From Leucoraja ocellata (lineage: Eukaryota): a stretch of DNA of 64,000 nt. The stretch spans positions 868,001 through 932,000 of the forward strand of contig JAWMAR010000622.1 of the NCBI GenBank assembly GCA_036785375.1. Reading direction: 5' to 3'. Positions 30,630 through 55,316 of the stretch are shown in pieces (position 1 is the stretch's first letter; each line of letters begins with the position of its first letter). Below the pieces are notes generated by a model. That model was given only the letters and a program-made list of their open reading frames with translations. It did not search any database and was not told where the DNA came from. Position numbers and translations under genes: made by a program.

Positions 30630-30739
30630 CTGTACTGAGCTTGTCCTCTTGTAATACATGTAGCAAAATATAGCTGAGATGAAGATGATTGTTGCGGCTG
30701 TAATAAGTACACGGCTTGAGACTCTTAATGGCTTAGAAC
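30630..30739 (-). CDS. CD2/SLAM-like copy 4: transmembrane exon
   Basis: 110 nt; one synonymous change versus the other copies. Confidence 0.85.
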
Positions 30740-35400: not shown

Positions 35401-36430
35401 CTCGGAGATAACTCACGGGAAAATGTACAAGCTCCATACAGACAGCACCCGTGGTCAGGGATCGAACCCTGGTCTCTGGCGCTGTGAGGCAGCAACTCTA
35501 CCGCTGCGCCACCGTGCCGTCCTCAGCACTCAGCGTGATCAAGCAGCATCTGTGAAGGTGAACGGCCACGTTTCGGGACTGCGTTGAGGAATTCATGGAG
35601 TGGGGGTGTGATAAAGCAGCGGGAAGGAGATTGGTTGAATCAAGCGGGGGAGGGGGCAGGCTTCAGACTGTAGGGACCGGAAGATGGACACACATTGCTG
35701 GAGTAGGAGCGGCGGTATCTCTGGAGAGAAGGAAAGGGCGTCGTTTCGCATCGAGACAGCCCCCCCCCCCCCCCCCCCCCCCCCCACAAGTCGGCGCCGA
35801 CCCAGCGTTCACCCCGTACTCCAACACCCCGGACACCTTTACATTTCTTTTTCCAAAATAGGTTCCGTGCGGTTCCCGGAGGTTGCAGGTGGTTGCCGGG
35901 GTTGCAGGTAGTGGAAGCAGGTAGTGAGACTGACAAAAACCTCCAGGAACCGCACGGAAACCTTGGGTGGAGCGCAAAGTCTCCAGAGGTTTCCGTTCAG
36001 CTTTCCTAAGTGGGACAGGGGCATAAATCTCCAAACGCGGTCGTCTTTGGAATGTTGGAGTGCGGGAAACCGGAGCACCCAGAGAAAACCACTCAATCAC
36101 AGGGAAAACGGTAAACTCCACACAGACAGCAGCCGCGGTCAGGATCGAACCCGGGTCTCTGCCGCTGTGTAACACTACCGCTGCACTGGAAAAGGTTAAC
36201 AGAGACATTTGTATGTGTTCCGTCTCTAATTGGAGGTGCGATGTGGGTGGGGAAAGGAGCACGGCCCATTTAAATTCCAATTCACAGTCATGCCCCGACG
36301 TCAACATTATTTATATATTGTATATCTGTCGGCACTGGACACGAATATCAAGAGAGAGACCCGCCAGATCAACTCATCTTGACGCCGGGGACAGTGAGCC
36401 TGAATTGGCATTGGGTTTGGACAGCAGAAC

Positions 36431-36458
36431 ATGCTTCCCGTGTGCCTTGTAATACTGA
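36431..36458 (+). CDS. ITIM-bearing transmembrane protein, exon 1 (start of signal peptide)
   Basis: aacATG CTT CCC GTG TGC CTT GTA ATA CTG A|gtaagt (consensus donor, phase 1): MLPVCLVIL. Joined to exon 2 it gives the signal peptide MLPVCLVILTFGVRVISA. Confidence 0.75.
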
Positions 36459-36669
36459 GTAAGTACCATGACGGATGGAGGGAAGGAGGTTTTTTTTTAA
36501 ATGTTGGGAGAAGGTGAGATGTAGGTTTACGTTGGGGAGGGGGGGGGGATATTTAATAGGAACCTGAGGGACAACCTTTTAACACAAAGTGTGGTAGGTG
36601 TATGGAACGAGCTGCCGGAGAGGATAGGTATAATTCCAATGTTTAAGAAACATTTAAATAGATACATGG

Positions 36670-37437
36670 ATAGAAACATATAAACATAGACAATGGGTGC
36701 AGGAGTAGGCCATTCGGCCCTTCGAGCCAGCACCGCCATTCAAAATTATCATGGCTGATTATCCAACTCAGTATCCTGTACCTGCCTTCTCTCCATACCC
36801 CCTGATCCCTTTAGCCACAAGGGCCACATCCAACTCCCTCTTAAATATAGCCAATGAACTGGCCTCGGCTACCTTCAGTGGCAGAGAATTCCGCAGATTC
36901 ACCACTCTCTGAGTAAAAAATGATTTTCCCACCTCGGTCCTAAAAGACTTCCCCCCTTATCCTTAAACTGTGACCTCTTGTTCTGACTTCCCCAACATCG
37001 GGAACAATCTTCCTGCATCTAGCCTGACCAGCCCCTTAAGAATTTTGTAAGTTTCTATAAGATCCCCCCTCAATCTTCTAAATTCTAGCGAGTACAAGCC
37101 GAGTCTATCCAGTCTTTCTTCATATGAAAGTCCTGACATCCCAGGAATCAGTCTGGTGAACCTTCTCTGTACTCCCTCTATGGCAAGAATGTCTTTCCTC
37201 AGATTAGGAGACCAAAACTGTACGCTATACTCCAGGTGTGGTCTCACCAAGACCCTGTACAACTGCAGTAGAACCCCCCTGCTCTTATACTCAAATCCTT
37301 TTGCTATGAATGCTAACATACCATTCGCTTTCTTCACTGCCTGCTGCACCTGCATGCCTACTTTCAATGACGGGTGTACCATGACACCAGGTCTGTTGCA
37401 TCTCCCCTTTTCCTAATCGGCCACCATTCAGATAATA
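36670..37437 (-). mobile_element. CR1 LINE 3' fragment
   Basis: ORF 36963-37382: QVQQAVKKANGMLAFI...LVRPHLEY.VQFWSP. Confidence 0.92.
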
Positions 37438-39327
37438 GGATAGGTTCAGAGGGACATGGGCCAAACGCAAGCAGGTGGGACTAATGTAGATGGGGCAAGT
37501 TGGTCGGCGTGGTCAATTAGAGCCTTTTCCACGCTGTGTGATTATATGACTGTGACTTCATGCTGGAATATTTACCGAAAAACAAAGTGCGAGATGTTTT
37601 GTTCGGTTTAGTTTAGGGGTACAGGAAACAGGCTCTTCGGCCCACTGAGTCCGTACTGACCAGCGATCCCCGCACATTAACCCAAGCCTGCACGCTCAAA
37701 GGACAATATTTTTTGTTTACACCAAGTATACAAACTCTAGCCAATTAATTCTCAAACTTGCGCGTCTTTGGAGCGTGCGAAGAAACCTAGAATTTCGGTG
37801 AAAATCCACGCGGTCACTGGTACAACGTAAAACTCCTACAGAGAGCACCAGTAGTGAGGATCAAACCTGGGTCTCTGGCGCTGCGAGGCAACAACTCTAC
37901 CGCTGCGCCACCGTGCTGCCCAGATCGGGCCCCTAGTGCAGACAGTGGCTTAAATTGCATGACTTCCCTGGGCCACGTGTAACACGGTCGATAGGCCAAC
38001 TCTTAAAGGTGCAGGTCATTTCCTACATTGATTACAACGGGTGTCAATGGCTATGGAAAGAAGGCATGAAAATTGGATTAGGAGAGATCTGCCATGATTG
38101 AATGGCGGAGTGGACTCGATGGGCCGAATGGCCTAATTCTACTCCAATAAAGCGTGAACGTGTGACATCCCCACAGCCGAAATGTCATCGTTCTGTATCA
38201 CAAGGTAATGGAGAAACCTCTACTTAACTAAACATAATTTGAAAACAAAATCAAATTGCAGATTCGTCAGCATTTACAGCAGGATTCCGCGCTGGTGTGA
38301 TTGACCTGTTAACGTTTCTGCTTAAATAAATTAATTGATTCAAATTATATATATATTTGTTTCCCCCCCCCCCCCCCCTCTTTTTTTCTTCTTCTTTTTA
38401 TACTTTATTTATTTATTTGTTTGTAAGTTTCGCAGCTGCCCCGCTGCATGTATTAGAAACCGTAAATTGCCGTAATATACGTGCTACCGACCGGGGACTA
38501 TTCCTCGCTAGCTTTCACGCGTTTGCAACCTTGTACGGAGAGGTGTCACAACTTCTAATATTTACAACAAAAAACTTGTGCTAGTTTGAGGAAGAATCGG
38601 CAAGGATGAACGACCTGTGAGTTTCCTACACTCCAAATGATATATTTATTTATTTCTCTATTTATCTATCCATTCGTCTATTCATTTATTTATTTATTTG
38701 GACAAGCTTTTCCCTTTGAGAGTAGGGAAGATTCAAACAAGAGGACATTACTTCAGAATTAAGGGACAGAAGTTTAGGGGTATTATGAGGGGGAACTTCT
38801 TTACTCAGAGAGTGGTAGCGGTGTGGAATGAGCTTCCAGTGGAAGTGGTGGAGGCAGGTTCATTGGTATCATTTAAAAATAAATTGGATAGGCATATGGA
38901 TGAGAAGGGAATGGAGGGTTATGGTATGAATGCAGGCAGGTGGGACTAAGGGGAAAAACATTTGTTCGGCTGGGACTTGTAGGGCCGAGATGGCCTGTTT
39001 CCGTGCTGTAATTGTTATATGGTTATATGGTTATTTATTTATTTTCTGTCTGTTTATTTATTTATTTATTTGTCTGCTTATTTATTTACTTATTTATTAG
39101 GAGTAAGCACAATACAGTGATGCCTTTTTTTCAGGTGTCAAATATATGTTGGCGTGTTACATTCTATGTATAGCTTCATGTTTTTATTTTTTTATTTTTT
39201 TAATATTTATATTTATAAATTATATTTTTAAAAGACTTGAAATGCACTTTAATTTCAGTCGGCCGTGTGTCTTGGGAACCACTCCTTTTAAGACTACGAG
39301 AGGGAAATTAAACTTCCCTTAAACTTC

Positions 39328-39957
39328 AAAAGGATTTGAGTATAGGAGCAGGGAGGTTCTACTGCAGTTGTACAGGGTCTTGGTGAGACCACACCTGGAG
39401 TATTGCGTACAGTTTTGGTCTCCTAATCTGAGGAAAGGCATTCTTGCCCTAGAGGGAGTACAGAGAAGGTTCACCAGATTGATTCCTGGGATGTCAGGAC
39501 TTTCATATGAAGAAAGACTGGATTGACTCGGCTTGTACTTGCTAGAATTTACAAGATTGAGGGGGGGGGATTATAGAAACTTACAAAATTCTTAAGGGGT
39601 TGGACAGGCTAGATGCAGGAAGATTGTTCCCGATGTTGGGGAAGTCCAGAACAAGGGGTCACAGTTTAAGGATAAGGGGGAAATCTTTTAGGACCGAGAT
39701 GAGGAAAATATTTTTCACACAGAGAGTGGTGAATCTGTGGAATTCTCTGCCACAGAAGGTAGTTGAGGCCAGTTCGTTGGCTATATTTAAGAGGGAGTTA
39801 GATGTGGCCCTTGTGGCTCAAGGGATCAGGGGGTATGGAGAGAAGGCAGGTACAGGATACTGAGTTGGATGATCAGCCATGATCATATTGAATGACGGTG
39901 CAGGCTCGAAGGGCCGAATGGCCTACTCCTGCACCTATTTTCTATGTTTCTATGTTT
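39328..39957 (+). mobile_element. CR1 LINE 3' fragment
   Basis: CR1 ORF2 C-terminus, 3' UTR and (ttctatgt) tail. Confidence 0.9.
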
Positions 39958-41643
39958 CCCGATTATTGCGCATGTTTGGGAAATTGCTGTTTTATCGGAC
40001 GTTTAGAAACCATGGTTTGCTTTACACATATAACATCGAACACTGAAAAATGTAATGTAGGAAGGAACTGTAGATGCTTACACCTTAGAGAGAGAGAGAG
40101 AAAAAAAATGCTGGAGTAACTCAGCGGGACAGGCAGCGTCTCTGGAGAGAAGGAACGGGTGATGATTCGGGTCGAGACCCTTCTTGTCTGAGGAAGCAAA
40201 AATCAAACTGATGGAGAAATGTCCCTCCTCAGATGGTGGCTGCCCCGCTGAGTTCCTCTAGCACGTTGTGTTCTTGCTCAAAAATCCGGCATTTGCAGTC
40301 ATTTGTGTCTCCGTTTTACAGTGGAAACAAAGACAAGGAGGTGCTGGTTAATACACAAAATGGCCCAAAATGCTGGAGTAACTCAGCGGGTCAGGCAGCA
40401 TCCTTGGAGAACGTGAATAGGTGATGGTTCGGGTCGAGGCCCCTCTTGAGAACCGACCCGAAACGTCACCTATCCATTTTCTCCCGGAAACATGCCTGAC
40501 CCACTGAGTTACTCCAGCACTTTGTGTCCTTCGACGATAGACACATTAATGCTGGAGTAACTCAGCGGGACGGGCAGCATTTCCTGAGAGAAGGGCGAAT
40601 GGATGATGTGTCGGGGGTCGAGACCCTTCTTCAGATCCGAAACGTCGTCCATTCCTTCTCTCCAGAGATGCTGCCTGTCCCGCTGAATTGCTCCAGCCTT
40701 CTGCGTCTGCTGAATAATAAAGCATAGGAGCAGGCGCTTCGGCCCATACTTTCCGTGCTGTACATGATGCCAAGATAAATTAATACCCTCTACATGTAGA
40801 TGGTCCATGCCCAAAGAGCGGTGAAAATATGGAACTGCCTCCTGCGGAAAGGAGCTGANNNNNNNNNNNNNNNNNNNNNNNNNNNNNNNNNNNNNNNNNN
40901 NNNNNNNNNNNNNNNNNNNNNNNNNNNNNNNNNNNNNNNNNNNNNNNNNNNNNNNNNNNNNNNNNNNNNNNNNNNNNNNNNNNNNNNNNNNNCCGAGTCC
41001 TTACCGACCGGCGAACGGGCGAACACACACATTGCCACTATCCAACAAACACTAAGGACAAGTTTACAATTTTACCGAAGCCAATTAAACCTGAGGTACG
41101 AAGCCTTTAAACCTGAGGTACACAAAAATGCTGGCGAAACTCAGCGGGTGCAGCAGCATCTATGGAGCGAAGGAAATAGGCAACGTTTCGGACCGAAACG
41201 TTGCCTATTTCCTTCGCTCCATAGATGCTGCTGCACTCGCTGAGTGTCTCTAGCAATTTTGTCTACCTTCGATTTTCCAGCATCTGCAGTTCCTTCTTAA
41301 ACCTTTAAACCTGTACGTTTTGGGAATTCAAAGATGCCTGCACGTTTTTTTTGGAATGTGGGAGGAAAGCGGAGAACCCGGAGAAAACCCATACAGGTCA
41401 CGGGGAGAATGTACAAACTCCGTACAGACAGTACCCCGTAGTCAGAATCTAACCCGGGTCTCTGGTGCTGTGAGGCAGAAACTGTGCCGCTAACATTCGC
41501 TGGTGGTTACTGGATACTGGAAAATAGGGATTAAGCCCTTAACATTTTACTGTGTTGGTGAGATAATATTAATCTGTTTGTAGTCGCTTGAGCTGAACAT
41601 GGCGTTGAATTTCCCAACTTATTTTCACCTGACTTTTGTTTAG

Positions 41644-41778
41644 CATTTGGTGTCCGGGTGATATCGGCGCCGACGGATGAAATGGTGACAGCTGGCGGAG
41701 CGAGAACGGCGACGGAGACCACAGTTATGAATGAGCCCATAACCGATACATCGTGGAGCAGTCTGACCAAATCCACAG
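41644..41778 (+). CDS. ITIM-bearing transmembrane protein, exon 2 (Ser/Thr-rich ectodomain)
   Basis: cttttgtttag|...|gtagaa, 135 nt, phase 1-1: FGVRVISAPTDEMVTAGGARTATETTVMNEPITDTSWSSLTKST. Non-repetitive island among transposons. Confidence 0.8.
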
Positions 41779-41835
41779 GTAGAAACTAGTGGGAAAGTCT
41801 AGGACAAGAGGTCATAGTCTCAGAATTAAAGGACG

Positions 41836-42330
41836 TTCTTGCCATAGAGGGAGTATAGAGAAGTTTCACCAGACTAATTCCTGGGATGGCAGGACTTTCA
41901 TATGAAGAAAGACTGGATAGACTCGGCTTGTACTCGCTAGAATTCAGAAGATTGAGGGGGATCTTATAGAAACTTACAAAATTCTTAAGGGGTTGGACAG
42001 GCTAGTTGCAGGAAGATTATTCCCGATGTTGGGGAAGTCCAGAACTATGGGTCACAGTTTAAGGATAAGAGGGAATTTAGGATCGAGATGAGAAAAACAT
42101 TTTTTACACAGTGAGTGGTGAATCTGTGGAATTCTCTGCCACAGAAGGTAGTTGAGGCCAGTTCATTGGCTATATTTAAGAGGGAGTTAGATGTGGCCCT
42201 TGTGGCTAAAGGGATCAGGGGGTATGGAGAGAAGGCAGGGATGGGATAGTGAGTTGGATGATCAGCCATGATCATATCGAATGGCGGTGCAGGCTCGAAT
42301 GGCCTACTCCTGCACCTATTTTCTATGTTT
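41836..42330 (+). mobile_element. CR1 LINE 3' fragment (another at ~43420-43850)
   Basis: Same family signature as 39328-39957. Confidence 0.88.
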
Positions 42331-44172
42331 CCTTTAAGAAGGAGAAAGAGTTCTATAGCATTGGGTAATACAGTGTGGAAACAGGCCCTTCGGCTCAACT
42401 TACCAACATCGGCCAACATGCCCCAGCTATACTAGTCCTACCTGCCTGCGCTTGCTCCATATCCCTCCAAACATGTCCTATCCATGTACCTGTCTAACAG
42501 TTTCTGAAACATTAGGATGGTCCCAGCCTCAACTACCTCCTCTGGCAGCTTGTTCCATACACCCACCACCCTTTGTGTGAAAATGTTACCCCTCAGATTC
42601 CTATTAAATCTTTTCCCCTTCACCTTGAACCTATGTCCTCTGGTCCTCGATTCCCCTACTCTGGGCAAGAGTCTCTGTACTTCTACCCGATCTATTCCTC
42701 TCATGATTTTATACACATCAATAAGATCACCCTCATCTTCCAGCTCTCCAGGGAATACAGACCCAGATGGGGAGGTATTTCTTTCATCGGGGGGTGGTCA
42801 ATCTGTGGAATTATTTGCCACAGAAGGCTGTGGAGGCCAAGTCAATTGATATTGTTTAAGGCAGAGATTCTCGACTAGTACGGGTGTCTGGATTTATATG
42901 GAGATCGCAGGAGAATTCTGTTAGGAGGGAGAGATAGATCAGGCATGATGGAGTGACGTGGTACACTTGATGGGCCGAATGGCCTTATTCTGTTCCTATC
43001 ACATGACATTATGATCTTGTGAACAGGGATTAAAATCCTGTCCTAACCCATCCGGACCCGACTGAATCCCATTTTTTAAAACGCAACCTGCGTTCGTAAC
43101 CCTTGCATTCCCTCTCTCTCCGTCCCTCCCCCACCCTGCCTCTCTTGCTAATTTCACCTCCTTCGTCATCACGTCGTCCCCAGCCAACAATGGACCATTG
43201 TGGGCTCCACCTTTCCCGAGTGATCTATGCCGGCACTGCTTTGTTCTGAACCTTCCCATACCTCAATATCCTTCTCCCCCGATTCTGAATCTGATGAAGG
43301 GTCTCGACCCGAACGCTCACCCATACCGTTTTCTTCCAGAGATGCTGCCTGACCCGCTGAGTTACCCATGCATTTTGTGTCTATCCTCTGCGTCCACTCG
43401 TGCGGGCTGCCTCATTATGTCTCGGCTTGTACTCGCTAGAATTTAGAAGATTGAGGGGGGATCTTATAGAAACTTACAAAAGTCTTAAGGGGTTGGACAG
43501 GCTAGATGCAGGAAGATTGTTACCGATGTTGGGGAAGTCCATGACAAGGGATCACAGCTTAAGGATAAGGGGGATATCCTTTAAGACCGAGATGAGAAAA
43601 AACATTTTCACACAGAGAGTGGCGAATCTCTGGAACTCTCTGCCACAGAAGGTAGTTGAGGCCAGTTCATTGGCTATATTTAAGATGGAGTTAGATGTGG
43701 CCCTTGTGGCTAAAGGGATCAGGGGGTACGGAGAGAAGGCAGGTACAGGATACTGAGTTGGATGATCAGCCATGATCATATTGAATGGCGGTGCAGGCTC
43801 GAAGGGCCGAATGGCCTCTACTCCTGCACCTATTTTCTATGTATCAATGTATCTATGATCTGAAGAGGGGTCCCGACCCGAACCGCCCCTTTAGACTTCA
43901 TACCTTAGAATTTAGATACAGTGCGGGAACAGGCTCTTCGGCCCACCGAGTCCCCACCTACCAGCGATCACCCCGTACACTATCACTATCCTACACACCA
44001 GGGACAAATTTACAGAAACGAATTACCCGACAAATCCAGCACGTCTTTGTGCTGTGGGAGGAAACCGGAAAACCCGGAGAAACCCCGCGCGGTCACAGAG
44101 AGAACGTACAAACTCCACACAGGCCGAATCCGCAGTCTCCACCCAGGAACCAGATTCTCTGGCGCTGTAAAA

Positions 44173-44398
44173 TGCCCCTGTCCCACTTAGGAAACCTGAA
44201 CGGAATCCTCTGGAGACTTTGCGCCCCACCCAAGATTTCCGTGCGGTTCCCGGAGGTTGCAGGTCGTTGCCGGAGGTTGCAGGTAGTGGAAGCTGGTAGG
44301 GAGACTGACAAAAACCTCCGGGAACCGCACGGAAACCTTGGGTGGGGCACAAAGTCTCCAGAGGTTTCCGTTCAGGTTTCCTAAGTGGGACAGGGACA
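44173..44398. mobile_element. PIF/Harbinger MITE nested in an HE1-like SINE
   Basis: Same TIR family; interrupts the SINE head ggcgctgTAAggcagcaac at TAA. Confidence 0.85.
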
Positions 44399-45196
44399 TA
44401 AGGCAGCAACTCTACCGCTGCACCTCATCTATCCATGTACTCCAGCTATGCTGCCTGACCAGTTGCGGTACTCCAGCATTTTGTGTTCTCGTTATCATCT
44501 TCTCCTTTCGGGAAACTCCCGCGCCCCATAGATTGGGGGAGCGTAGAGCGACTAATTGATTCCATCCCCCCACGGGCCAGCAGCGGCCCTGTGGGCCAAA
44601 TGGCCGCCTGCACGGCTGCAGTAAATTTGGGGAGGAAACAACAGATGTCTCACATTCAGGCCGATGCCGTGTGACACTGGGCTTGGCGGTGTATGGGGGA
44701 GGTGCGGGCGCCGGCAGGTCGCCCACTCTCACAGGCATTTCACCTCTGACCAAGTCACCAACTTGCATTAAGCTAAGCCCGTGGGCTGTCTGTGGGTAGA
44801 TTACCTATCTTTGACTCTCTAGTTGTGAGTCTTGTTGCTAAGTGTGCAGGTCTCATGCAGGTGTGCAGGTCTCATGCTCTCGCTGCGGTTTCATGAGGAA
44901 AAGCGTAGCCTTCACCCACCGTCCTCGCTACTAAATCGTGTCCATCGCTCTACATTCGACCAGACCTGATCGAAGTATGCAACATTATGATAGGCATAGA
45001 GGGGGTGGACAGTCAGAACCATTTTTCCAGGGTGAAAATGTCAAAGACTCGAGGGCCCAGCTTTTCATTCAGAGGAGCAAATTTCAAATGAGATTGTCAA
45101 AGAGTTATAGTCGCCCAGTGGGGAAACAGGCCCTTCGGCCCAACTTGCCCATACCGTCCAATATGTGTTCGGCCCATACCCCTTTAAACCTAACCT

Positions 45197-46345
45197 ATGA
45201 TATTGGGGGTATGGTGTTGACATGGATAGAAAATTGGTTGGCTGACCGGAAGCAAAGAGTAGGAGTGAACGGGTCCTTTTCACAATGGCAGGCAGTAGTG
45301 AGTGGAGTGCCGCAAGGCTCGGTGTTGGGGCCGCGACTGTTTACCATATATATTAATGATTTGGAAGAGGAAATTAGGAGCAACACTAGCAAGTTTGCGG
45401 ATGACACAAAGCTGGGTGGCAGTGTGAACTGTGAAGAGGATGTTAGGAGATTGCAGGGTGACCTGGACAGGTTGAGTGAGTGGGCAGATGCGTGGCAGAT
45501 GCAGTATAATATAGATAAATGTGAGGTTATCCACTTTGGCGGCAAAAACAAGGGGGCAGATTATTATCTCAATGGGGTTAGGTTAGGTAAGGGGGAGGTG
45601 GGCGTCCTTGTACACCGGTCACTGAAAGTTGTCGTGCAGGTACAGCAGGCAGTGAAGAAAGCTAATGGAATGTTGGCCTTAATAACAAGAGGATTTCAGT
45701 ATAGGAGTAAAGAGGTTCTTCTGCAGTTGTATAGGGCTCTGGTGAGACCACATCGGGAGCATTGTGTACAGTTTTGGTCTCCTAATTTGAGCAAGGACAT
45801 CCTTGTGATTGAGGCAGTGCAGCGTAGATTCACGAGATTGATCCCTGGGATGGCGGGACTGTCATACGAGGAAAGATTGAAAAGACTAGGCTTGTATTCA
45901 CTGGAGTTTAGAAGGATGTGGGTGAGGGGGGGGGGGGGGGGGGGGGTGAGGATCTTATAGAAACATATAAAATTATAAAAGGACTGGACAAGCTAGATGC
46001 AGGAAAAATGTTCCCAATGTTGGGCGAGTCCAAAACCAGGGGCCACAGTCTTAGAATAAAGGGGAGGCCATTTAAGACTTAGGTGAGAAAAAAACCTTTT
46101 CACCCAGAGAGTTGTGAATTTATGGAATTCCCTGCCACAGACGGCAGTTGAGGCCAAGTCACTGGATGGATTTAAGAAAGAGTTAAATAGAGCTCTAGGG
46201 GCTAGTGGAGTCAAGGGATATAGGGAGAAGGCAGGCACGGGTTATTGATAGGGGATGATCAGCCATGATCACAATGAATGGCGCTGCTGGCTCGAAGGGC
46301 CAAATGGCCTCCTCCTGCACCTATTTTCTTTGTTTCTATGTTTCT
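45197..46345 (+). mobile_element. CR1 LINE, longest RT fragment in the window (5'-truncated)
   Basis: SGVPQGSVLGP.LFTIYINDL...KFADDTKLGG RT motifs; frameshifted at the poly-G run near 45926-45946. Confidence 0.95.
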
Positions 46346-46688
46346 ATCATGTACCTGTCGAAATGTTTCTTAAACGTTGCGATTGTCCTAGCCTCAACTA
46401 CCTCCTCCGGCAGCTTGTTCCATACACCCACCACCTTTTGTGTGAAAAAGTTACCCCTCCGATTCCCATTGCATCCTTTCCCGTGGTCGAGTCTACGCCG
46501 CCACTTGTTCTGGCTCTGTGAGGCAGCAACTCTACCGATACAGCACTGTGACAATTTTCCAGTAGCCCCCTCCCCCAGACCCTCACAATACCCTGGGCAT
46601 GTTTGATCCATATGAACCCTGGCCAACGGTCAACAGACCAAATGTAGAGGTTTACCGGCGACCCGTGGTGTAACAACTCTTTCTGCAG

Positions 46689-46811
46689 ACGGTGACAGCG
46701 GAGCGACTTGCCCCTTGCTCTCTGGAAGTGACATTTTGATCGCCGCCGCGCTTGGAATTGTGTTCGGGATCGCCGCGTTGTCCTGCCTGTACCTGGTTAA
46801 ACATCGGATCG
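46689..46811 (+). CDS. ITIM-bearing transmembrane protein, exon 3 (TM helix)
   Basis: ctctttctgcag|...|gtgagt, 123 nt, phase 1-1: DGDSGATCPLLSGSD ILIAAALGIVFGIAALSCLYLV KHRI. Confidence 0.9.
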
Positions 46812-47790
46812 GTGAGTGACTGAGCTCCTTCCAGGGGTGTTCCTTAGATATCGGGCAAGGGGCCGGTCAAAGGATTACTCGAGGATTGGTAACTGCCCGG
46901 GTTTTTCAGATGCCAGCGCACCGTGCGAGTTGAGTTCTCTCAAGAATATTTCCCGGAACATCGGAGTTTGAAGGGAGACTTGATAGAAGTTACAGAGTTA
47001 TAGAATCATGGAGTGATACATTGTGGAAACAGGCCGTTCAGCCCAGCTTGTCCATACTGACCAACATTCCCCATCTACACCCGTCCAACCTGCTCGCGTT
47101 TGATCCACATCCCTCTAAACCTGTCCAAATCCATGTACCTGTCTAACTGTTTCTTAAACGTTGATATAACCCCTGCCTCAACTACCACCTCTGGCAGTTT
47201 TTTTTCATACACCCACCACCCTTTGTGTGAAAACGTTACCCCTCAGATTTCTATTAAATCCTTTCCCCTTCTCCTTCAACCTATGTCCCTCTGGTCCACG
47301 ATTCACCTACTCTGGTCAAGAGACTCTGTGCATTTGCCCGATATGTTCCTCTCATGATTTTATACACCTCAACAATAACATCGCCCTTCATCCTTCTGCG
47401 CTCCAAGGAATAGAGTCCCAACCCTGAGTTCTAGCCCTGGCAACATCTTCTAAGCACCTTTTCTAGATTGACAGTATATTTTGTATAACATGGTGGCCAG
47501 AACTGAACGCGATACTCTAAATGCGGCCTCACCAACGTCTTATACAAATCCCCACTACGGGCGCTGTCTGTACGGAGTTTGTGCCTTCTCCCCGTGACCG
47601 CGTGGATTCTGTCCGAGATCTTCGGTTTCACCGACACTCCGAAGACGCACAGGTTTGTAGGTTAACTGGCTTGGTATAAATGCAAATTGCCCCGCGTGTG
47701 CGGGGGTCGCTGGTCGGTGCAGACTTGGTGGGCCTGTTTTCGCGCTGTATCTCCAACTCAGCGGGACAGGCAGCATCTCTGGATAGAAGG

Positions 47791-47830
47791 AATGGGTGAC
47801 GTTTCGGGTCGAGACCCTTCTTCAGACTGA
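47791..47830 (-). ncRNA. Minimal hammerhead ribozyme core in a Penelope-like terminal repeat
   Basis: Minus strand: CTGAAGA-A-GGGTC-TC-GACCC-GAAAC-GTC, i.e. CUGANGA box, stem II, GAAA, palindromic stem III and GUC cleavage triplet. Confidence 0.6.
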
Positions 47831-48377
47831 GGATATGGGCAAAAACGCACGAAGTGGGTCCAGTGCAGATGGGGCATGTTGATCAGTGTGGGCAAGTTGG
47901 GCCGAAGGGCCTGTTTCCATGACTCGTGTCCCATATAATATTCTGAATTATCGGGATTTTATCTTTTTTAATGTAATCTACCACCCTGCCTCGCAAATCT
48001 GCTCCCTGCTAAATTACAATACGAAATCACCAATTTCATTCTAATTTCCAATATATTATCTAAAACGAATGGGACGTCTAATTGTTATTTAATTACCACT
48101 GATTAGAATCTTCTCCGATTACATGCAGACTTGCTTCACCAATGTTCATTTCATTTGAACATCGAATCATTAATTTCATTCTAACTTCCTTTAACAGAAA
48201 ACGGCTGATTTCAATCTGATCTATTTCACTATAATCTGAAATTATTGATCATAATGTGTTCGCAATTGAAATCGTGAATCGTTGTTCTGCGCCTCATTAC
48301 AATATAAACCAGATGATTTCGATGTAGATTTAGTTTAGAGATACAGCGCGAAAACAGGCCCTTCGGCCCACTGAGTC

Positions 48378-48937
48378 ATAGAAATATAGAAACATAGAAA
48401 TTAGGTGCAGGAGTAGGCCATTCGGCCCTTCGAGCCTGCACCGCCATTCAATATGATCATAGACACATAGAAACATAGAAATTAGGTGCAGGAGGAGGCC
48501 ATTCGGCCCTTCGAGCCTGCACCGCCGTTCAATATGATCATGGCTGATCACCCAACTCAGTATTCCGTACCTGACTTCTCTCCATACCCTCTGATCTCCT
48601 TAGCCACAAGGGCCACATCTAACTCCCTCTTAAATATAGCCAATGAACTGTGGCCTCAACTACCTTCTGTGGCAGAGAATCCCACAGATTCACCACTCTC
48701 TGTGTAAAACATGATTTTCTCATCTCGGTCCTAAAAGACTTCCCCCTTATCCTTAAACTGTGACCCCTTGTTCTGGACTTCCCCAACATCGGGAATAATC
48801 TTCCTGCATCTAGCCTGTCCAACCCCTTAAGAATTTTGTAAGTTTCTATAAGATCCCCCCTCAATCTTCTGAATTCTAGCGTGTACAAGCCGAGTCTATC
48901 CAGTCTTTCTTCATATGAAAGTCCTGCCATCCCAGGA
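48378..48937 (-). mobile_element. CR1 LINE 3' fragment with duplicated tail
   Basis: ORF 48619-48930; the 3' UTR/tail is repeated twice at 48378-48540. Confidence 0.9.
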
Positions 48938-49274
48938 GTCCACGCCGACCAGCGATCCCCGCACTATCCTACATACATTAGGGGTAAGTTAAAGTGACAC
49001 CAAGCCAATAAACCTTTAGTTTATTTGGAGTGTGGAGGAAACTGGAGCACCCGGAGAAAACCCACGCAGCTCACGGGGAGAACCTACGAACTCCATACAA
49101 AACAGTACCAGTAGTCAGGATCGAACCCGGGTTTCTGGCGCTGTGAGCAGCAAATCTACCGCTGAGCAACCGTGCCGCCCTGATATATTAATGTCGAGCG
49201 TGGTTAATTGTAAAGAGTTCGCTTGTGTTTCAGTTCCATTCCAATCCCACACAAGAGATTAGTGTGCAATATTA

Positions 49275-50380
49275 GACCACATGGTATTCGAGGTAAAGGC
49301 ATTGACATGGATAGAGGGCTGGTTGGTAGATAGGATGCAAAGAGTAGGAATTAACGGGTCCCTTTTCAGAATGGCAGGCAGTGATTAGTAGGGTGCACCA
49401 AGGCTCAGTGCTGGGACCCCAGTTATTTACAAATTATAACAGATTTAGTCGAAGGACTTAAATATAACATCTCCAAGCTTGCGGATGACACAAAGCTGGG
49501 TGGCAGGGTGAGCTGCGAGAAAGATGCTTTGAGGCTGCAGTGTGACTTGGATAGGTTTGGTGAGTGGGCAGAAGATTGGCAGATGCAGGATAATGTAGAT
49601 AAAAGTGAGGTTATCCACTTTGGTGGCAAGAACAAGAAGGCAGGTTGTTATCTGAATGGTGTCAGATAGAAGAAAAAGGGAGGTGCAACGAGACTTGTAC
49701 ATCAGTCATTGAAAGTAAGCATGCAGGTACAGCAGGCAGTGAAGAAAGCAAATGCCACGTTGGCCTACATAGCGAGATGATTGGAGCATAGGAGCAAGGA
49801 GATCCCTCTGCAGTTGCACATGGTCCTAGTGAGACCGCAACAGAGTCTGTGTGCAGTTTTGGTCTCCTAATTTGAGGAAACACATTCTTGCTGTTGAAGG
49901 AGTAGGTTCATCAGATTAATTCCCGGGATGGCGGGAATGACATATGATGAAATAATGGATCGACTGGGCTAGCATTCACTGGAATTTAGAAGGATGAGAG
50001 GATATCTTATAGAAACATGTAACATTCTTAAAGGGTTGGACAGGCGAGATGCAGGAAAAAATGTTCCCGATGTTGGGGTAGTCCAGAACCAGGGGTCACA
50101 GTTTAAGAATAAGGGGTAGACCATTTAGGATCGAGATGAGGATAAACCCAGACAGTTGTGAATCTGTGGAATTCTCTGCCACATAAGGCAGTGGAGACCA
50201 ATTCACTGGATGTTTTCAGTGGAGTTAGATATCGCTCTTGAAGCTAATGGAATCAATGGATATGGGGAGAAAGCAGGACCGGGGTACTGATTTTGGATGG
50301 TCAGCCATGATCATATTGAATGGCCGCTGGCTTAAAGAGCCGAATGGCATAATTCTGCACCTATTATCTATGTTTCTATT
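49275..50380 (+). mobile_element. Older degraded CR1 RT fragment
   Basis: Homologous to 45197-46345 with stops and indels. Confidence 0.88.
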
Positions 50381-50392
50381 TAACATTTTCAG

Positions 50393-50457
50393 CCGCCTGT
50401 ACGGATTCGAGCTGCTTTGATGTGTCCCCTGATTTTATTCGTCGATCGAACAGCCAG
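50393..50457 (+). CDS. ITIM-bearing transmembrane protein, exon 4 (juxtamembrane)
   Basis: cattttcag|...|gtactt, 65 nt, phase 1-0, exactly the phase bridge needed between exons 3 and 5: AACTDSSCFDVSPDFIRRSNSQ. Confidence 0.75.
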
Positions 50458-51119
50458 GTACTTGTCATTTTCACTTCGTTCTTTGATCTCGTTCAGTTTA
50501 CCCAGCTAGAGTTTTAAGAGATACTGCATGGCCCTTCCACTCACCGAGACCCCACCGATCAGCGATCACCCATTCACGCTAGTTCTAACTTAGACAGTAG
50601 GGGCAACCTCAGTTCCGTTCAGTTTAGTTTATTTTCACGTGTACCGAGGCGCAGTGAAAAGTTTTCTGCTGCGTGCTATCCAGTCAGCAGAAAAACAATA
50701 CATGTTTACAATTAATCCATGGATAGATACGATAGAAACATGGAAATTAGGTGCAGAAGTAGGGCATTCGGCCCTTCAAGCCAGCTCCGCCATTCAATAT
50801 GATCATCCAAAATCAGTACCCCATTCCTGCTTTTTCCCCATATCCCTTGATTCCGTTAGCCCGAAGAGCTAAATGTAATTCTAGCTCGAAAACATCCAGT
50901 GAATTGGCCTCCACTGCCCTTTCCGTGGCAGAGAATTCCACACGTGCACAATTCTCTGGGTGAAAAGATGTTTCCCTCATCTCAGTGCTAAATGACCTAC
51001 ACCCTATTCTTAAACTGGTGGGGGGGGGGGGGGGGGGCGGCTGATTCTCGAGGTGTGTCTTTTCACACTTCTCGACCTTTTGCCTGATGGAAGAGGGGAT
51101 AAGAGGGAATGGCCAGGGT

Positions 51120-51335
51120 TATGCTGCTGAAATCTCTGCAATAACCAACCTGACCTCCCGGTGGCTCAGCACTTCAACTCCCCCTCCCATTCTGTATCCG
51201 ACCTCTCTGTCCTGGGCCTCCTCCACGGCCAGAGTGAGCACCACCGGAAATTGGAGGAACAGCACCTCATATTCCGCTTGGGGTGTCTCCATCCTGGGGG
51301 CATGAACATTGAATTCTCCCAATTTTGTTAGCCCT
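51120..51335 (+). mobile_element. Penelope-like element, GIY-YIG C-terminal fragment (another at ~63350-63590)
   Basis: HRKLEEQHLIFRLG...GMNIEFS motif. Confidence 0.75.
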
Positions 51336-51657
51336 TGCTGTCTCCTCCCCTTCATCAACCCTCGGGCTGTCTCCTCCCATCCCTCAGCCCTCGGGCTCCT
51401 CCTCCTCCCTTTTCCTTTCTTCTCCCCGTGATGGTGTTGAGATGTAAATACTGTGCGAAGTTTAAATGAAACCGTGAAAAAATATTGAGGGTAGAAATAT
51501 TGTGCTGCATTGTCCTGTTTATCCCAACGTCGACGTTGATAATTCTGCTGCTCGCAGTGCGGTGTGATATATATGTAGTGTTGTAAGAATAGTATGTAAT
51601 GTTAATTCAGGGCTGTTGTGGTGCTGAAATATCCGTCTCTATTCTATTTCTTTCCAG

Positions 51658-51810
51658 CTGCCCCGGGGACAACATATCATCTACTCGAGCCTCAATGTGA
51701 AACCAGCGCGGACACAGAGAGAGACTTCGGGAGACGGGGAGGATTCACACGAGGATTCACCGGGAGACCCGGTGTCGACGCGCGGGCAGTTCGTGGAAGA
51801 GCAGGAGAAG
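51658..51810 (+). CDS. ITIM-bearing transmembrane protein, exon 5 (ITIM 1)
   Basis: ttctatttctttccag|...|gtacca, 153 nt, phase 0-0: LPRGQHIIYSSLNVKPARTQRETSGDGEDSHEDSPGDPVSTRGQFVEEQEK. Confidence 0.85.
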
Positions 51811-53394
51811 GTACCAATAGCAAACATTTTAACAATTGGCGACCGCAATCCAAGAGTCAAGGGGGTTTTATTGCCGTATGTCCCAGGTAGAATAATAAAA
51901 TTCTTACTTGTAGCAGCACAACAGAATGTGTAAACATGGCACACTGTAAACAATGGAATAAACGAGAAAAGGTTATTTCAGTGTGTGTATATACATACAC
52001 AAACTCNNNNNNNNNNNNNNNNNNNNNNNNNNNNNNNNNNNNNNNNNNNNNNNNNNNNNNNNNNNNNNNNNNNNNNNNNNNNNNNNNNNNNNNNNNNNNN
52101 NNNNNNNNNNNNNNNNNNNNNNNNNNNNNNNNNNNNNNNNNNNNNNNNNNNNNNNNNNNNNNNNNNNNNNNNNNNNNNNNNNNNNNNNNNNNNNNNNNNN
52201 NNNNNNNNNNNNNNNNNNNNNNNNNNNNNNNNNNNNNNNNNNNNNNNNNNNNNNNNNNNNNNNNNNNNNNNNNNNNNNNNNNNNNNNNNNNNNNNNNNNN
52301 NNNNNNNNNNNNNNNNNNAAACAAACAGCAATAATGGTGGAATAACAGCATTATGTAGTTCAGAGCTTGGATGTGCCAGTGTATCCTACCTAGTACAAGT
52401 TGAAGTGAGTTTATTGTCATGTGGCCGTGGTAACGATAGCCCGGGAGTGAGTGAAAGAGACTTGTTGACTGATGGGCCTCTTCTAATTCAGGGCAACTTT
52501 TCTAATGCAAAGTGCTGGAGAAACACATCGCTCCTGTAACTCAGTGGGTCAGGCAGCATCTCTGGTGGATGTGGGTGGGCCACGTTCGAGTCGGCGCACT
52601 TGTTTAGATTTATTTTTCTGTTTCCTTCAGAAAGAACGGGTGTGGGCGGGGGCGGGGGCGGGGGGGGGGGGGGGGGGGGTAGTAGGAGGATGGGGCATAG
52701 GGGAGGGGAGTGGCGTGGGTGAAGAGCTGGGAGCGAGAGAAGACCGGGACAGAGCAAGACCGGCCATAGATGGCCTCAGGCAGAGTGGTGCCCTGCTGGG
52801 CCCTATTGTTGACATGGGGAAGAGTGATCTGAAGAGTGGGACAACGTGGAGAGCTGAGAAAATGGTTAAAAGACGGGGGGGGGGGGGGAGGACAGGGAGA
52901 ATGGGAGGGGTGATGGAGGGAGGAAGGGAGAGAGGGGGAGGGAATTGGGCATTGGGAGGACGGGGGATAACACATTGTCCCCGGCGTGAATGTGGAGAAT
53001 GATGTATGGCGCTATTACAGCGGTTCAATGTTTCCAATGTTGACGCGATACTGGTGCTGCATTTCAATGGCATCACGGGGCAAAGAAACTGGTCCTTAAG
53101 CCCATAGAGTCACAGAGTCAGTCAAGGAATCTGACCAACTCGTCCACGCCAATCCACAGGCCTCATCTGAGCTGTTCCAACATACCCACGTTTGCCCCAT
53201 ACTCAACGAAACATTTATTTCCCACGCATCTGCCCCAATGCCTATTCAATATTGTTATTGCACCTGCCTCAACCTCGCCCTCTGGCGGCTCATTTTATTC
53301 ACGTCTGGGTCAACAATCAAGGGGCCAAATGCTGGAGTAACTCAGCGAGTCAGGCAGCATCTCTGGAGTGAGGGAATGGGTGACGTTTAGGGTC

Positions 53395-53915
53395 ATAGAA
53401 ACATAGAAAATAGGTGCAGGAGTAGGCCATTCGGCCCTTCGAGCCTGCACCGCCATTCGATATGAGCAGTATCCCATCCCTGCCCTCTCTCCATACCCCC
53501 CGACCCCTTTAGCCACAAGGGCCACATCTAACTCCCTCTTAAATATAGCAAATGAACTGTGGCCTCAACTACCTTCTGTGGCAGAGAATTCCACAGATTC
53601 ACCACTCTCTCTGTAACACATGATTTTCTCATCTCGGTCCTAAAATACTTCCCTCTTATCCTTAAACGGTGACCCGTTGTTCTGGACTTCCCCAACATCG
53701 GGAATAATCTTCCTGCATCTAGCCTGTCCAACCCCTTAAGAATTTTGTACGTTTCTATAAAATCCTCCCCTCAATTTTCTGAATTCCAGCGAGTACAAGC
53801 CGAGTCCATCCAGTCTTTCTTCATATGAAAGTCCTGACATCCCAGGAATCAGTCTGGTGAACTTTCTCTGTACTCCCTCTATGGCAAGAATGTCTTTCCT
53901 CAGATTAGGAGACCA
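53395..53915 (-). mobile_element. CR1 LINE 3' fragment
   Basis: ORF 53528-53731 plus tail. Confidence 0.88.
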
Positions 53916-54371
53916 GGGTCCTAATTAGGGTCGAGGCCCTTCTTCAGAATTCTCTTCCTATCTAGGGACTGATCAATACTCGGGATTCCAAGGTGCCATG
54001 TGACATTACTGCGAGCGTGAATAGTTCAGTTTAGTTTAGTGATACAGCGCGGAAACAGGCACAACGAGGCCGCGCCTACTAGCTCCCCGTACACTCGCTC
54101 TATCCTATACACACTAGGGAAAATTTAAAATATGTACCAAAGCGAATACACCTACACACTTGTACGTCTTTTGGAGTGTGGGCGGAAACCGGAGCACCCG
54201 GAGAAAGCCAATGCAGGTCACGGAGTGAAACGGACAAACTCCGCACAGGCAGCAATTGTTATCCGGATTGAGCCCGGGTCTCCGGCGCTGTGAGGGAGCA
54301 ACTCCAGCGGGAGCGGAGAATCAGTTGACAACGGAGCTCTATTTCACCGTCTCAATTGTGCTTGCTTGTAG

Positions 54372-54467
54372 GTGCTCGGTGGGCAAGAAATCGCCTATGC
54401 GTATCTGAATCTGAAGCCGAAACGGAGACAAAGTGAGTCCCCTGAGGCAGACGGAGAGATTCATTGA
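54372..54467 (+). CDS. ITIM-bearing transmembrane protein, exon 6 (ITIM 2 and stop)
   Basis: cttgcttgtag|VLGGQEIAYAYLNLKPKRRQSESPEADGEIH*; an alternative internal donor gtgagt lies near 54433. Confidence 0.82.
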   Translation: MLGGQEIAYAYLNLKPKRRQSESPEADGEIH

Positions 54468-54520
54468 GAACGGGAGCGGACACACGGTGCGTCAAGAGTC
54501 TAGAGTGTTTTATTGTCATG

Positions 54521-55209
54521 CTAGATCAAGTGGGGCCCGTTAGTTCCCTGTCACATGGGAGGCCTGGCCCCCAACGCAACCGGTCCTCCCAACGCAATAT
54601 TCCACCACTCACCCATTCCCCCAACTTAATCTGTCCACCCACCGCAATATTCTACCACTCATCCATAGCCCCCAACTGCACTGGGCGGCTGATTTCCCCT
54701 TATCCCCCAGCACTCCCTCCCCCTCCTCATCAGCCTCCCAATTGGACTTGCTGGCATGACTTTAACAAAAATCAAATTGCGCTCCCCCTGCCTCCACCTC
54801 CACACCCCCTCCCCTCCACCACCCCCCCCCCCCCCCCCCCACCCCCTCCTGTTCAGCCTCAATGTTATTAAACTTTTAAAAAATGCTGCCAGGACTCAGT
54901 GTTCTGTGATCGCAACATTGGTGCGGGGTCCCATTGTGACGTCATAATTGTAATTGCCAGCGTGCAGATGGAACAAGTGTTTCTTAAAGTGGGATTTTAT
55001 AAAGTTAAAAATGTGAATAATTTGTAAAATAGAAAATCAATCTGAAAGAAACTTGTTAAAAACACACCACAAGACAATTGTGAGTACGGTGGTCCAGAAT
55101 TTGTAGCGCTATCGTGTGCCTTTTTTTGTCGTGGTTCCGGAATCTCACTCACTTACCCACTCACACGCACAATAACAAAGTAACAAGATGAGAATTTTAG
55201 TAATATAGA
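54521..55209 (-). mobile_element. Probable non-autonomous Helitron
   Basis: Minus strand starts a|TCTATATTACTAAAA and ends with an imperfect GC hairpin followed by CTAG; no TSD. Confidence 0.5.
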
Positions 55210-55279
55210 TATATATAGATGTTCCAAATATATGTCTATATGTGTATCTATCTATTTATCTGTCCATTTACCTATCTAG

Positions 55280-55316
<37 letters not shown>

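What the first reader, a model, noticed from the sequence alone, without database searches (positions are those of the whole stretch)
36431..54467. Hidden six-exon gene for an Ig-less, mucin-stalk, dual-ITIM transmembrane receptor or adaptor
Seen: six small non-repetitive islands among transposons splice with GT-AG sites and consistent phases (1,1,1,0,0). Lengths 28+135+123+65+153+96 give 600 nt: MLPVCLVILTFGVRVISA PTDEMVTAGGARTATETTVMNEPITDTSWSSLTKSTDGDSGATCPLLSGSD ILIAAALGIVFGIAALSCLYLV KHRIAACTDSSCFDVSPDFIRRSNSQLPRGQHIIYSSLNVKP...EKVLGGQEIAYAYLNLKPKRRQSESPEADGEIH*. The ectodomain is about 51 aa, 18 of them Ser/Thr, with one Cys and no folded domain. Known: I-x-Y-x-x-L is the ITIM consensus, and tandem ITIMs recruit SHP-1/SHP-2. 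Inference: an inhibitory immune receptor or transmembrane adaptor (SIT1-like layout) that I cannot assign to a named gene. The ORF track does not recover it.
Basis: partly seen in the sequence, partly recalled or inferred. Interest (0 to 1): 0.88.

Follow-up and report, generated by a model that had tools for sequence, protein, structure and literature searches.

The report
Candidate small ITIM membrane protein, skate
A probable unannotated six-exon gene in a skate immune-receptor cluster would encode a small membrane protein with no antibody-like domain and two inhibitory tyrosine motifs, but nobody has yet shown that it is transcribed or conserved.

Summary
Six segments with AG/GT borders and phases 1,1,1,0,0 add up to 600 nt and read as leader, Ser/Thr-rich stalk, one membrane helix and a 108-aa tail with two I-x-Y-x-x-L motifs. 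Both N gaps lie inside introns.

Evidence that it is a real gene comes from the sequence only:
- The two motif exons, E5 and E6, are old duplicates. They share 14 of 25 residues, 7 of them through synonymous codons, and the exon starts at the same place in both.
- The exons are GC- and CpG-rich compared with their introns; 0 of 20,000 random intron sets match them.
- No Ig exon lies between them.
- The gene sits between a tandem array of V+C2 Ig receptors and a TRIM-like gene, both on the other strand.

A library that holds at least three skate proteomes has no relative, and Pfam gives no match.

The closest known layouts are LST1 and SIT, but membership in either family is not shown. The joined protein was never searched.

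An earlier unchecked note (s1-885441) reports a similar arrangement 87 kb upstream in the same genome.

Verdict: a plausible new ITIM adaptor-like gene of moderate interest.

The parts
36431..36458 (+). Exon 1: start codon and first 9 codons of a hydrophobic leader. Ends in phase 1 with donor GTAAGT.
   Evidence: A sits at -3 before the ATG, and an in-frame stop lies 9 codons upstream. Mean Kyte-Doolittle score is 3.0. The exon lies in the unique island 36187-36527, about 250 nt beyond the end of the tandem array.
41644..41778 (+). Exon 2: end of the leader (…VISA) and 36 aa of Ser/Thr-rich ectodomain. Phase 1 to 1.
   Evidence: 14 Ser/Thr of 36. The open frame has no ATG upstream, so it needs an upstream exon such as E1. 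Pfam gives 0 hits. No other copy exists in the window.
46689..46811 (+). Exon 3: 14 aa of stalk with the single ectodomain Cys, a 22-aa membrane helix without charged residues, then KHRI. Phase 1 to 1.
   Evidence: The best 19-mer has a Kyte-Doolittle score of 2.64. It is one of only 17 such charge-free windows in all six frames of the 64 kb, most of which are simple repeats.
50393..50457 (+). Exon 4: 65 nt, a membrane-proximal cytoplasmic piece with two Cys. It moves the frame from phase 1 to phase 0.
   Evidence: A repeat tail ends 9 nt upstream and supplies part of the pyrimidine tract. This is the least supported exon: it has no motif and no paralogue.
51658..51810 (+). Exon 5: first I-x-Y-x-x-L motif (IIYSSL) followed by an acidic stretch. 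Phase 0 to 0.
   Evidence: It is a paralogue of exon 6. No relative was found in 1.84 billion representatives, the PDB or the Atlas.
54372..54467 (+). Exon 6: second I-x-Y-x-x-L motif (IAYAYL) with an overlapping Y-L-N, then the stop codon TGA.
   Evidence: The open frame begins exactly at the acceptor, because the TAG of the acceptor is itself a stop. It is a paralogue of exon 5.
54468..54872 (+). Putative 3' untranslated region up to the first ATTAAA (54867).
   Evidence: One search lists ATTAAA at 54867 and 55446. The stretch lies inside the unique island 54310-55227. Its use is not shown.
40859..40992 (.). Assembly gap inside intron 1. It separates E1 from the rest of the model.
   Evidence: Continuity across it could not be tested.
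52007..52318 (.). Assembly gap inside intron 5. It could hide a further phase 0-0 cytoplasmic exon.
   Evidence: Continuity across it could not be tested.

Best explanation
A real but unannotated six-exon gene of a skate encodes a 199-aa type I membrane protein. It has a cleavable leader, a 51-aa Ser/Thr-rich stalk with one Cys and no folded domain, one uncharged helix, Cys residues next to the membrane, and a 108-aa disordered tail.

The tail carries two ITIM-type tyrosines 51 residues apart, on two exons that arose by duplication.

Inferred mechanism: the protein works like the small transmembrane adaptors LST1 and SIT. After phosphorylation of the two tyrosines by a Src-family kinase, it would recruit SH2 phosphatases (SHP-1/SHP-2) to the membrane and dampen signalling in leukocytes. 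It may act as a disulfide-linked dimer through the stalk Cys.

Shown: exon structure, motifs, exon duplication under protein-level constraint, compositional contrast with the introns, absence of an Ig exon, and location in an Ig-receptor cluster.

Inferred: transcription, topology, glycosylation, dimerisation, phosphorylation and phosphatase binding.
For: - **Exon structure.** Borders, phases and stop are exact.
- **E5 and E6 are paralogues.** tblastn gives E of about 1e-4 within the window.
  - The extended motif I.Y..LN.KP occurs only in these two places in the six frames.
  - 26 of 75 nt differ, yet 14 of 25 residues are the same, and 7 of those 14 use synonymous codons. Random placement of 26 changes reached 14 or more identities in 0.8% of 20,000 trials. 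Differences by codon position are 8/6/12.
  - Both acceptors sit exactly 9 nt before the shared Gly-Gln codons.
  - The flanks do not align, apart from one 23-nt match.
- **Composition.** Exons have GC 0.558 and CpG observed/expected 1.12, against 0.47 and 0.57 for the introns. Of 20,000 random intron sets, 0 reach 52 CpG and 0.2% reach the exon GC.
- **Membrane helix.** Such a helix is rare in the window: 17 windows in six frames.
- **No Ig exon** lies between E1 and E6.
- **Boundaries.** The + strand space is bounded by - strand genes on both sides.
- **Parallel layouts.** LST1 and SIT show the same layout (passages).
Against: - There is no RNA evidence.
- phmmer of E5 against 1.84 billion representatives found only an unrelated repetitive protein. 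That library holds annotated proteins of Amblyraja radiata, Leucoraja erinacea and Rhinoraja longicauda, so no close orthologue is annotated there.
- No Pfam family matched any of the 5 exon peptides at E up to 10. The PDB and Atlas searches were blank.
- E4 has no support of its own.
- Three donors (E2, E4, E5) depart from the consensus after GTA.
- The generic ITIM pattern is common: 241 hits in the six frames.
- The model spans two assembly gaps.
Confidence: 0.5

Rival explanations
1. The gene is real, but the tyrosine motifs do not act as ITIMs. They could be Y-x-x-hydrophobic sorting signals for endocytosis or docking sites for Grb2-type adaptors (Y-L-N). The protein would then be a mucin-like surface or trafficking protein, or a positive scaffold.
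For: Y-S-S-L, Y-A-Y-L and Y-L-N-L all fit Y-x-x-hydrophobic, and Y-L-N fits Y-x-N (read; both consensus motifs are recalled knowledge). In SIT, the ITIM binds SHP2 yet does not carry the inhibitory effect (passages). The 51-residue spacing between the tyrosines is longer than I recall for most tandem ITIM pairs.
Against: Both copies keep Ile at -2 and Leu at +3 across an old duplication, together with Asn-x-Lys-Pro after the motif. That is more than a sorting signal needs. The locus is an immune-receptor cluster.
Confidence: 0.15
2. It is a relic. A transmembrane and ITIM-tail cassette of a former Ig receptor was left behind by rearrangement at the edge of the tandem array. It is either untranscribed or gives a non-functional product, and E1/E2 are fortuitous or decaying.
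For: The model starts about 250 nt from the end of a young tandem array of Ig receptor genes. The phases 1,1,1 then 0,0 are those I recall for Ig-superfamily receptor genes. ITIM exons move as cassettes in such clusters (passages on Xenopus CEACAM). No annotated orthologue exists in three skates.
Against: All six exons are open with intact splice sites and an intact leader. CpG has not decayed in the exons although it has in the introns. The E5-E6 pattern indicates long protein-level constraint. No exon resembles any exon of the neighbouring array.
Confidence: 0.17
3. It is part of a larger receptor. Further exons lie in the two assembly gaps or are used from elsewhere, so the true product is not Ig-less or has a longer tail.
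For: Gap lengths are only estimates (finding text). Phase 1-1 and phase 0-0 exons could be added without breaking the frame. A second hydrophobic open frame lies at 51497, just before E5.
Against: An Ig exon in the intron 1 gap would split the leader, which runs from E1 into E2. Intron 2 has no gap and no Ig-like frame. The gap in intron 5 lies between cytoplasmic exons. No Ig exon on the + strand was seen in 36431-64000.
Confidence: 0.1
4. It is a chance assembly. Open segments with AG and GT borders are common in 18 kb, and a reader looking for a receptor could chain them.
For: Exons are short (28-153 nt). The generic ITIM pattern gives 241 hits in the window. There is no homologue, no RNA evidence and no Pfam match.
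Against: The two-copy extended motif has synonymous changes and a shared exon start. The CpG/GC contrast was reached by 0 of 20,000 random sets. A membrane helix is rare in the window. The order leader-stalk-helix-basic anchor-tail is correct.
Confidence: 0.08

Closest known systems
LST1 (leukocyte-specific transcript 1), transmembrane adaptor
   Same: A small single-pass protein without a folded ectodomain. It has a Cys outside the membrane, Cys next to the inner face, and a tail with two ITIMs that bind SHP-1/SHP-2. Its gene lies in an immune gene cluster (passages).
   Different: LST1 is 97 aa with a very short outer segment. The model is 199 aa with a cleavable leader and a 51-aa Ser/Thr-rich stalk. 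No sequence similarity was found: exon-wise Pfam gave 0 hits. That Pfam holds an LST1 family is recalled, not checked.
SIT1 (SHP2-interacting transmembrane adaptor)
   Same: SIT is 196 aa with a 22-aa leader, a short ectodomain with one Cys that makes a disulfide dimer, a 20-aa helix, a long tail with tyrosine motifs including an ITIM that binds SHP2, and glycosylation (passages).
   Different: SIT has an 18-aa ectodomain with one N-glycan site, and five tyrosine motifs of which one is an ITIM. The model has 51 aa outside, no N-x-S/T site (its only Asn is followed by Glu-Pro) and two ITIM-type motifs. No sequence similarity was detected.
ITIM-bearing Ig-superfamily receptors (CEACAM1, SLAM/CD2 family, Siglecs)
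   Same: Leader split over two exons. Phase-1 ectodomain and membrane exons are followed by small phase-0 tail exons, each carrying one tyrosine motif. The gene lies in a tandem receptor cluster.
   Different: No Ig domain: 0 of 57 frames. No exon resembles the neighbouring V+C2 genes.
DAP12 / FcR gamma type signalling adaptors
   Same: A small, nearly ligand-less, probably disulfide-linked membrane protein encoded near receptors that seem to have short tails.
   Different: Those adaptors carry ITAMs and pair through a charged residue in the helix (recalled knowledge). Here the motifs are inhibitory, and neither this helix nor the neighbour's has a charged residue.

Membership tests
ITIM-bearing signalling proteins (motif class, not a homologous family) | (I/V/L/S)-x-Y-x-x-(L/V/I) in a cytoplasmic tail | tested here: met
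   IIYSSL is in E5 and IAYAYL in E6, both after the helix. The strict I.Y..L pattern gives 12 hits in the six frames, and these are 2 of them.
ITIM-bearing signalling proteins (motif class, not a homologous family) | Tyrosine phosphorylation and SHP-1/SHP-2/SHIP recruitment | not testable with these tools
   This needs phosphopeptide pull-down or co-precipitation.
LST1 | Sequence similarity to the LST1 family | tested here: not met
   Pfam-A scan of 5 exon peptides at E up to 10 gave 0 families. Scanning exon by exon is less sensitive than scanning a whole protein, and the joined protein was not scanned.
LST1 | Very short outer segment with a dimerisation Cys, a palmitoylation site right after the helix, and two ITIMs | tested here: inconclusive
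   There is one Cys 8 residues before the helix, Cys residues at +7 and +12 after it, and two ITIM motifs. However, the outer segment is 51 aa, and neither dimerisation nor palmitoylation was tested.
SIT1 | Sequence similarity to the SIT family | tested here: not met
   Pfam gave 0 hits. The PDB search with E5 gave 0.
SIT1 | 18-aa ectodomain with an N-glycan site next to the dimerisation Cys | tested here: not met
   The ectodomain is 51 aa and has no N-x-S/T site.
Ig-superfamily inhibitory receptors (CD2/SLAM, CEACAM, Siglec) | At least one Ig domain in the ectodomain | tested here: not met
   0 of 57 + strand open frames of 55 aa or more between E1 and E6 hit an Ig family at E up to 0.01. 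The control Ig exon scored 2.5e-6. Sequence inside the two gaps was not read.
Mucin-like surface proteins | Dense O-glycosylation of a Pro/Thr/Ser-rich, often repetitive region | tested here: inconclusive
   18 of 51 residues are Ser/Thr, but there are only 3 Pro and no repeats (read). No glycosylation predictor was on hand.

The most novel reading that the evidence does not exclude
The protein is an inhibitory signalling adaptor that works in trans. The neighbouring V+C2 Ig receptors, which show no tyrosine-motif tail exon in the window, would supply ligand binding, and this Ig-less protein would supply the ITIMs. That would make it an inhibitory counterpart of DAP12 or FcR gamma, encoded head-to-head with its receptors. 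This pairing would not use the classical charged-residue contact, since neither helix carries a charge.
Probability: 0.05. Interest if true: 0.85.

Novelty: new member of a known kind. Interest (0 to 1): 0.38.

Why it matters
Small transmembrane adaptors with inhibitory motifs (LST1, SIT) are, as far as I recall, described mainly from mammals. My paper searches found none described in cartilaginous fish. Searches listed no such paper, but only CC-licensed PMC and bioRxiv are searched.

A real gene here would add an unrelated protein with the same layout at the base of jawed vertebrates. That would show that Ig-less ITIM platforms arose more than once, or are much older than known.

It would also flag a blind spot of annotation pipelines in repeat-dense immune clusters.

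If the adaptor pairs with its short-tailed Ig neighbours, it would be a new way of wiring inhibitory receptors.

Tried and rejected
**RNA evidence**
- The look-up of sequencing runs listed no holder on record as RNA.
- 14 rows guessed as RNA, from organisms A, B, C and one unnamed, each hold 0.10-0.11 of the words. The share is so uniform over five studies that I suspect a conserved repeat rather than the exons (341 of 5,301 nt). This was not tested.
No junction could be checked.

**Homologues**
- phmmer of E5 against 1.84 billion representatives gave one hit, P0001. It is an 870-aa repetitive protein that matches only the acidic stretch in 13 repeats, so I rejected it as chance.
- Pfam on E2-E6 gave 0 hits. 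E1 has only 9 full codons and was too short to scan.
- The PDB search with E5 gave 0.
- The Atlas search gave a best score of 0.80, which is chance level.
- The search of earlier findings by sequence was blank.
- Its length window (0.55-1.75 times the query) excludes a 199-aa protein for every stop-free frame around an exon; the longest is 101 aa. One search had already read every representative without a length limit.

**Hidden Ig exon.** A regex on 57 frames and Pfam on the same 57 both found none.

**Derivation from the neighbouring family.** tblastn of the exon peptides against the window found no significant match outside the model. The E3-to-neighbour helix match at E = 0.43 reflects composition only.

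**The 'CD2/SLAM' label of the neighbours.** The C2 exon matches generic Ig domains in the PDB (DCC 2.7e-6, CEA 1.8e-5). No SLAM or CD2 entry is among the 60 shown of 64 matches. I therefore call them V+C2 Ig receptors only.

**Other points**
- timed out with no output and was rerun.
- Supplements of the papers were closed. Additional file 1 of PMC5112662 (alignments of ITIM exons) might bear on tail-exon phasing.

Full report
**What was checked first.** I read 36300-55200 and recomputed the model exon by exon, without joining.

| Exon | Coordinates | Length |
|---|---|---|
| E1 | 36431-36458 | 28 nt |
| E2 | 41644-41778 | 135 nt |
| E3 | 46689-46811 | 123 nt |
| E4 | 50393-50457 | 65 nt |
| E5 | 51658-51810 | 153 nt |
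| E6 | 54372-54467 | 96 nt |

- Each internal exon is preceded by a pyrimidine tract and AG. Each of E1-E5 is followed by GT: GTAAGT, GTAGAA, GTGAGT, GTACTT, GTACCA.
- Phases are 1,1,1,0,0, the sum is 600 nt, and E6 ends in TGA.
- The split codons read Thr, Asp and Ala.
The product would be 199 aa: about 18 aa of leader ending …VISA, a 51-aa ectodomain, a 22-aa uncharged helix preceded by Asp and followed by Lys-His-Arg, and a 108-aa tail.

**The assembly gaps.** The gaps (40859-40992 and 52007-52318) lie in introns 1 and 5, at least 197 nt from an exon border. They cannot affect the frame. They do mean that E1, E2-E5 and E6 sit on three assembled blocks. The order and strand of those blocks are taken from the scaffold, and I could not test continuity.

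**Is it more than chance?** Four tests rest on the sequence alone.

1. *E5 and E6 are paralogues.*
   - tblastn of each exon peptide against the window finds the other exon at E of about 1e-4 and nothing else of note.
   - The motif I.Y..LN.KP occurs exactly twice in all six frames of the 64 kb, in these two exons and in the model's frame.
   - Over 25 aligned codons, 26 of 75 nt differ yet 14 residues are identical, 7 of them through synonymous codons. The third codon position carries most of the changes (8/6/12).
   - Scattering 26 changes at random gave 14 or more identities in 0.8% of 20,000 trials.
   - Both exons begin exactly 9 nt before the shared Gly-Gln codons, and the flanks no longer align.
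   - This is what an old exon duplication kept under protein-level selection looks like.
2. *Composition.* The six exons have GC 0.558 and 52 CpG (observed/expected 1.12). The introns have 0.47 and 0.57, and the other unique islands have 0.69. Of 20,000 random sets of six intron segments of the same lengths, 0 had 52 CpG and 0.2% reached the exon GC.
3. *Membrane helix.* Charge-free hydrophobic 19-mers are rare: 17 in six frames, most of them in simple repeats. E3 is one of them.
4. *Repeats.* E1, E2, E3, E5 and E6 lie in DNA without a second copy in the window, and E4 starts 9 nt after a repeat tail.

There are 19 unique islands of 40 nt or more (29% of 36000-55500), and 14 of them carry no predicted exon. 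The generic ITIM pattern by itself means little, with 241 hits in the window.

**Is it Ig-less?**
- Of 57 + strand open frames of 55 aa or more between E1 and E6, 0 matched an Ig family at E up to 0.01 and 1 matched reverse transcriptase. An Ig exon of the neighbouring gene, used as control, scored 2.5e-6.
- The leader runs from E1 straight into E2, so an Ig exon in the intron 1 gap would split it. Intron 2 has no gap. The intron 5 gap lies between cytoplasmic exons.
- 'Ig-less' therefore holds as far as the sequence can be read.

**Surroundings.**
- Window 1-36179 is a tandem array of units of about 8.9 kb that are 91-96% identical. It ends about 250 nt before the ATG of E1.
- The units carry, on the - strand:
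  - a V-set exon (14267-14788, 6.2e-8);
  - C2-type Ig exons (13454-13783, 22382-22666, 31310-31666);
  - a membrane exon repeated four times, the nearest at 30648-30746.
In my test the C2 exon matched only generic Ig domains.
- Downstream, a PRY-SPRY exon lies on the - strand at 61313-61939 (SPRY 2.1e-24).
- The model is therefore the only + strand gene candidate between two - strand genes: head-to-head with an Ig receptor and tail-to-tail with a TRIM-like gene.
- The SPRY exon's best relatives are skate proteins: 85% Amblyraja radiata, 82% Rhinoraja longicauda and Leucoraja erinacea. Of 883 candidates, 405 scored E of 1e-10 or better. The window therefore comes from a skate or a close relative.

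**Evidence against, and what is missing.**
- There is no transcript evidence. No listed holder of 46600-51900 is on record as RNA.
- phmmer of E5 against 1.84 billion representatives gave a single hit, an unrelated repetitive protein.
  - One search shows that the collection behind that library holds annotated proteins of at least three skates. A close orthologue is therefore not annotated in them.
  - Distant relatives that keep only the motif would be missed, since E5 against E6 itself scores only 28 bits.
- Pfam (5 exon peptides, 0 hits at E up to 10), the PDB and the Atlas (best 0.80) gave nothing.
This lowers the sensitivity of all family tests.

**What it most likely is.** I put about two in three on a real gene roughly as modelled, and 0.5 on the full reading: a small type I membrane protein that acts as an ITIM platform.
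- The two tyrosines lie 51 residues apart in a disordered tail.
- One Cys sits 8 residues outside the helix, and Cys residues sit at +7 and +12 inside.
- This is the layout given for LST1: dimerisation Cys, helix, palmitoylation site and two ITIMs that bind SHP-1/SHP-2 (passages).
- It is close to SIT: 196 aa, leader, one Cys, glycan, and an ITIM that binds SHP2 (passages).
- Membership in either family is not shown. There is no sequence similarity, the outer segment is much longer, and there is no N-glycan site.

**Rivals.**
- A real gene whose motifs serve sorting or Grb2-type docking (0.15).
- A relic cassette of an Ig receptor at the edge of the array (0.17).
- Part of a larger gene with exons in the gaps (0.10).
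- Chance (0.08).

**The boldest reading not excluded.**
- The neighbouring Ig receptors show no convincing tyrosine-motif exon downstream of their membrane exon in 27000-30647 (a crude scan).
- An unchecked note (s1-885441) reports 'tail-less' receptors head-to-head with a 'ligand-less ITIM protein' 87 kb upstream.
- The protein could then be an inhibitory adaptor that serves those receptors in trans.
- Against this, neither helix has the charged residue that classical receptor-adaptor pairs use, and no association can be tested here. I give it 0.05.

**Literature.**
- I saw search listings.
- I saw passages of PMC2193021 (SIT), PMC8111073 (LST1) and PMC5112662 (Xenopus CEACAM).
- Searches for 'SLAM family' + 'cartilaginous fish' + 'CD2' and for 'transmembrane adaptor' / 'cartilaginous' / 'ITIM' listed no paper on an Ig-less ITIM adaptor in cartilaginous fish. 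The library is partial, and supplements were closed.

**Verdict.** This is a new member of a known kind, if real. Interest is moderate (0.38), because the decisive RNA and orthologue tests remain to be done.

Noticed in passing
window 1-36179: Tandem array of units of about 8.9 kb that are 91-96% identical. On the - strand it carries V-set, C2 Ig and membrane exons. Only 1 of the 3 equivalent V-region frames tested (14267-14788, but not 23330-23857 or 32314-32694) hits V-set, so some copies may be degenerate or shifted in frame. N gaps recur at like positions in the units.
   Followed up: partly
window 61313-61939 (- strand): A PRY-SPRY (B30.2) exon of a TRIM39-like / A33-like gene that converges on the model. 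Its best relatives are skate proteins at 82-85% identity, from a very large family: 405 proteins at E of 1e-10 or better among 883 candidates.
   Followed up: partly
window 51497-51553 (+ strand): A second charge-free hydrophobic 19-mer (Kyte-Doolittle 2.82) lies about 100 nt upstream of E5, in the same unique island but in another frame than E5. It could be chance or an alternative exon.
   Followed up: no
window 51851-51873 and 54493-54515: A 23-nt match (87%) lies shortly downstream of both E5 and E6. It is either the start of the same repeat family after both exons or a trace of the duplication.
   Followed up: no
window 44935-45957 (+ strand, intron 2): A 341-aa open frame of a LINE reverse transcriptase (RVT_1, 1.2e-13). 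A more decayed copy lies in intron 3 (about 77% identical).
   Followed up: no
window 46600-51900 (runs X1-X14): 14 small runs guessed as RNA, from three named organisms and five studies, each hold 0.10-0.11 of the sampled words. The share is uniform, which suggests one conserved or high-copy element rather than the exons.
   Followed up: no
window 36431-64000, one of 91 open frames: One frame gave a weak GATA zinc finger hit (E 0.0051) in the pooled Pfam scan. I did not find out which frame it was.
   Followed up: no
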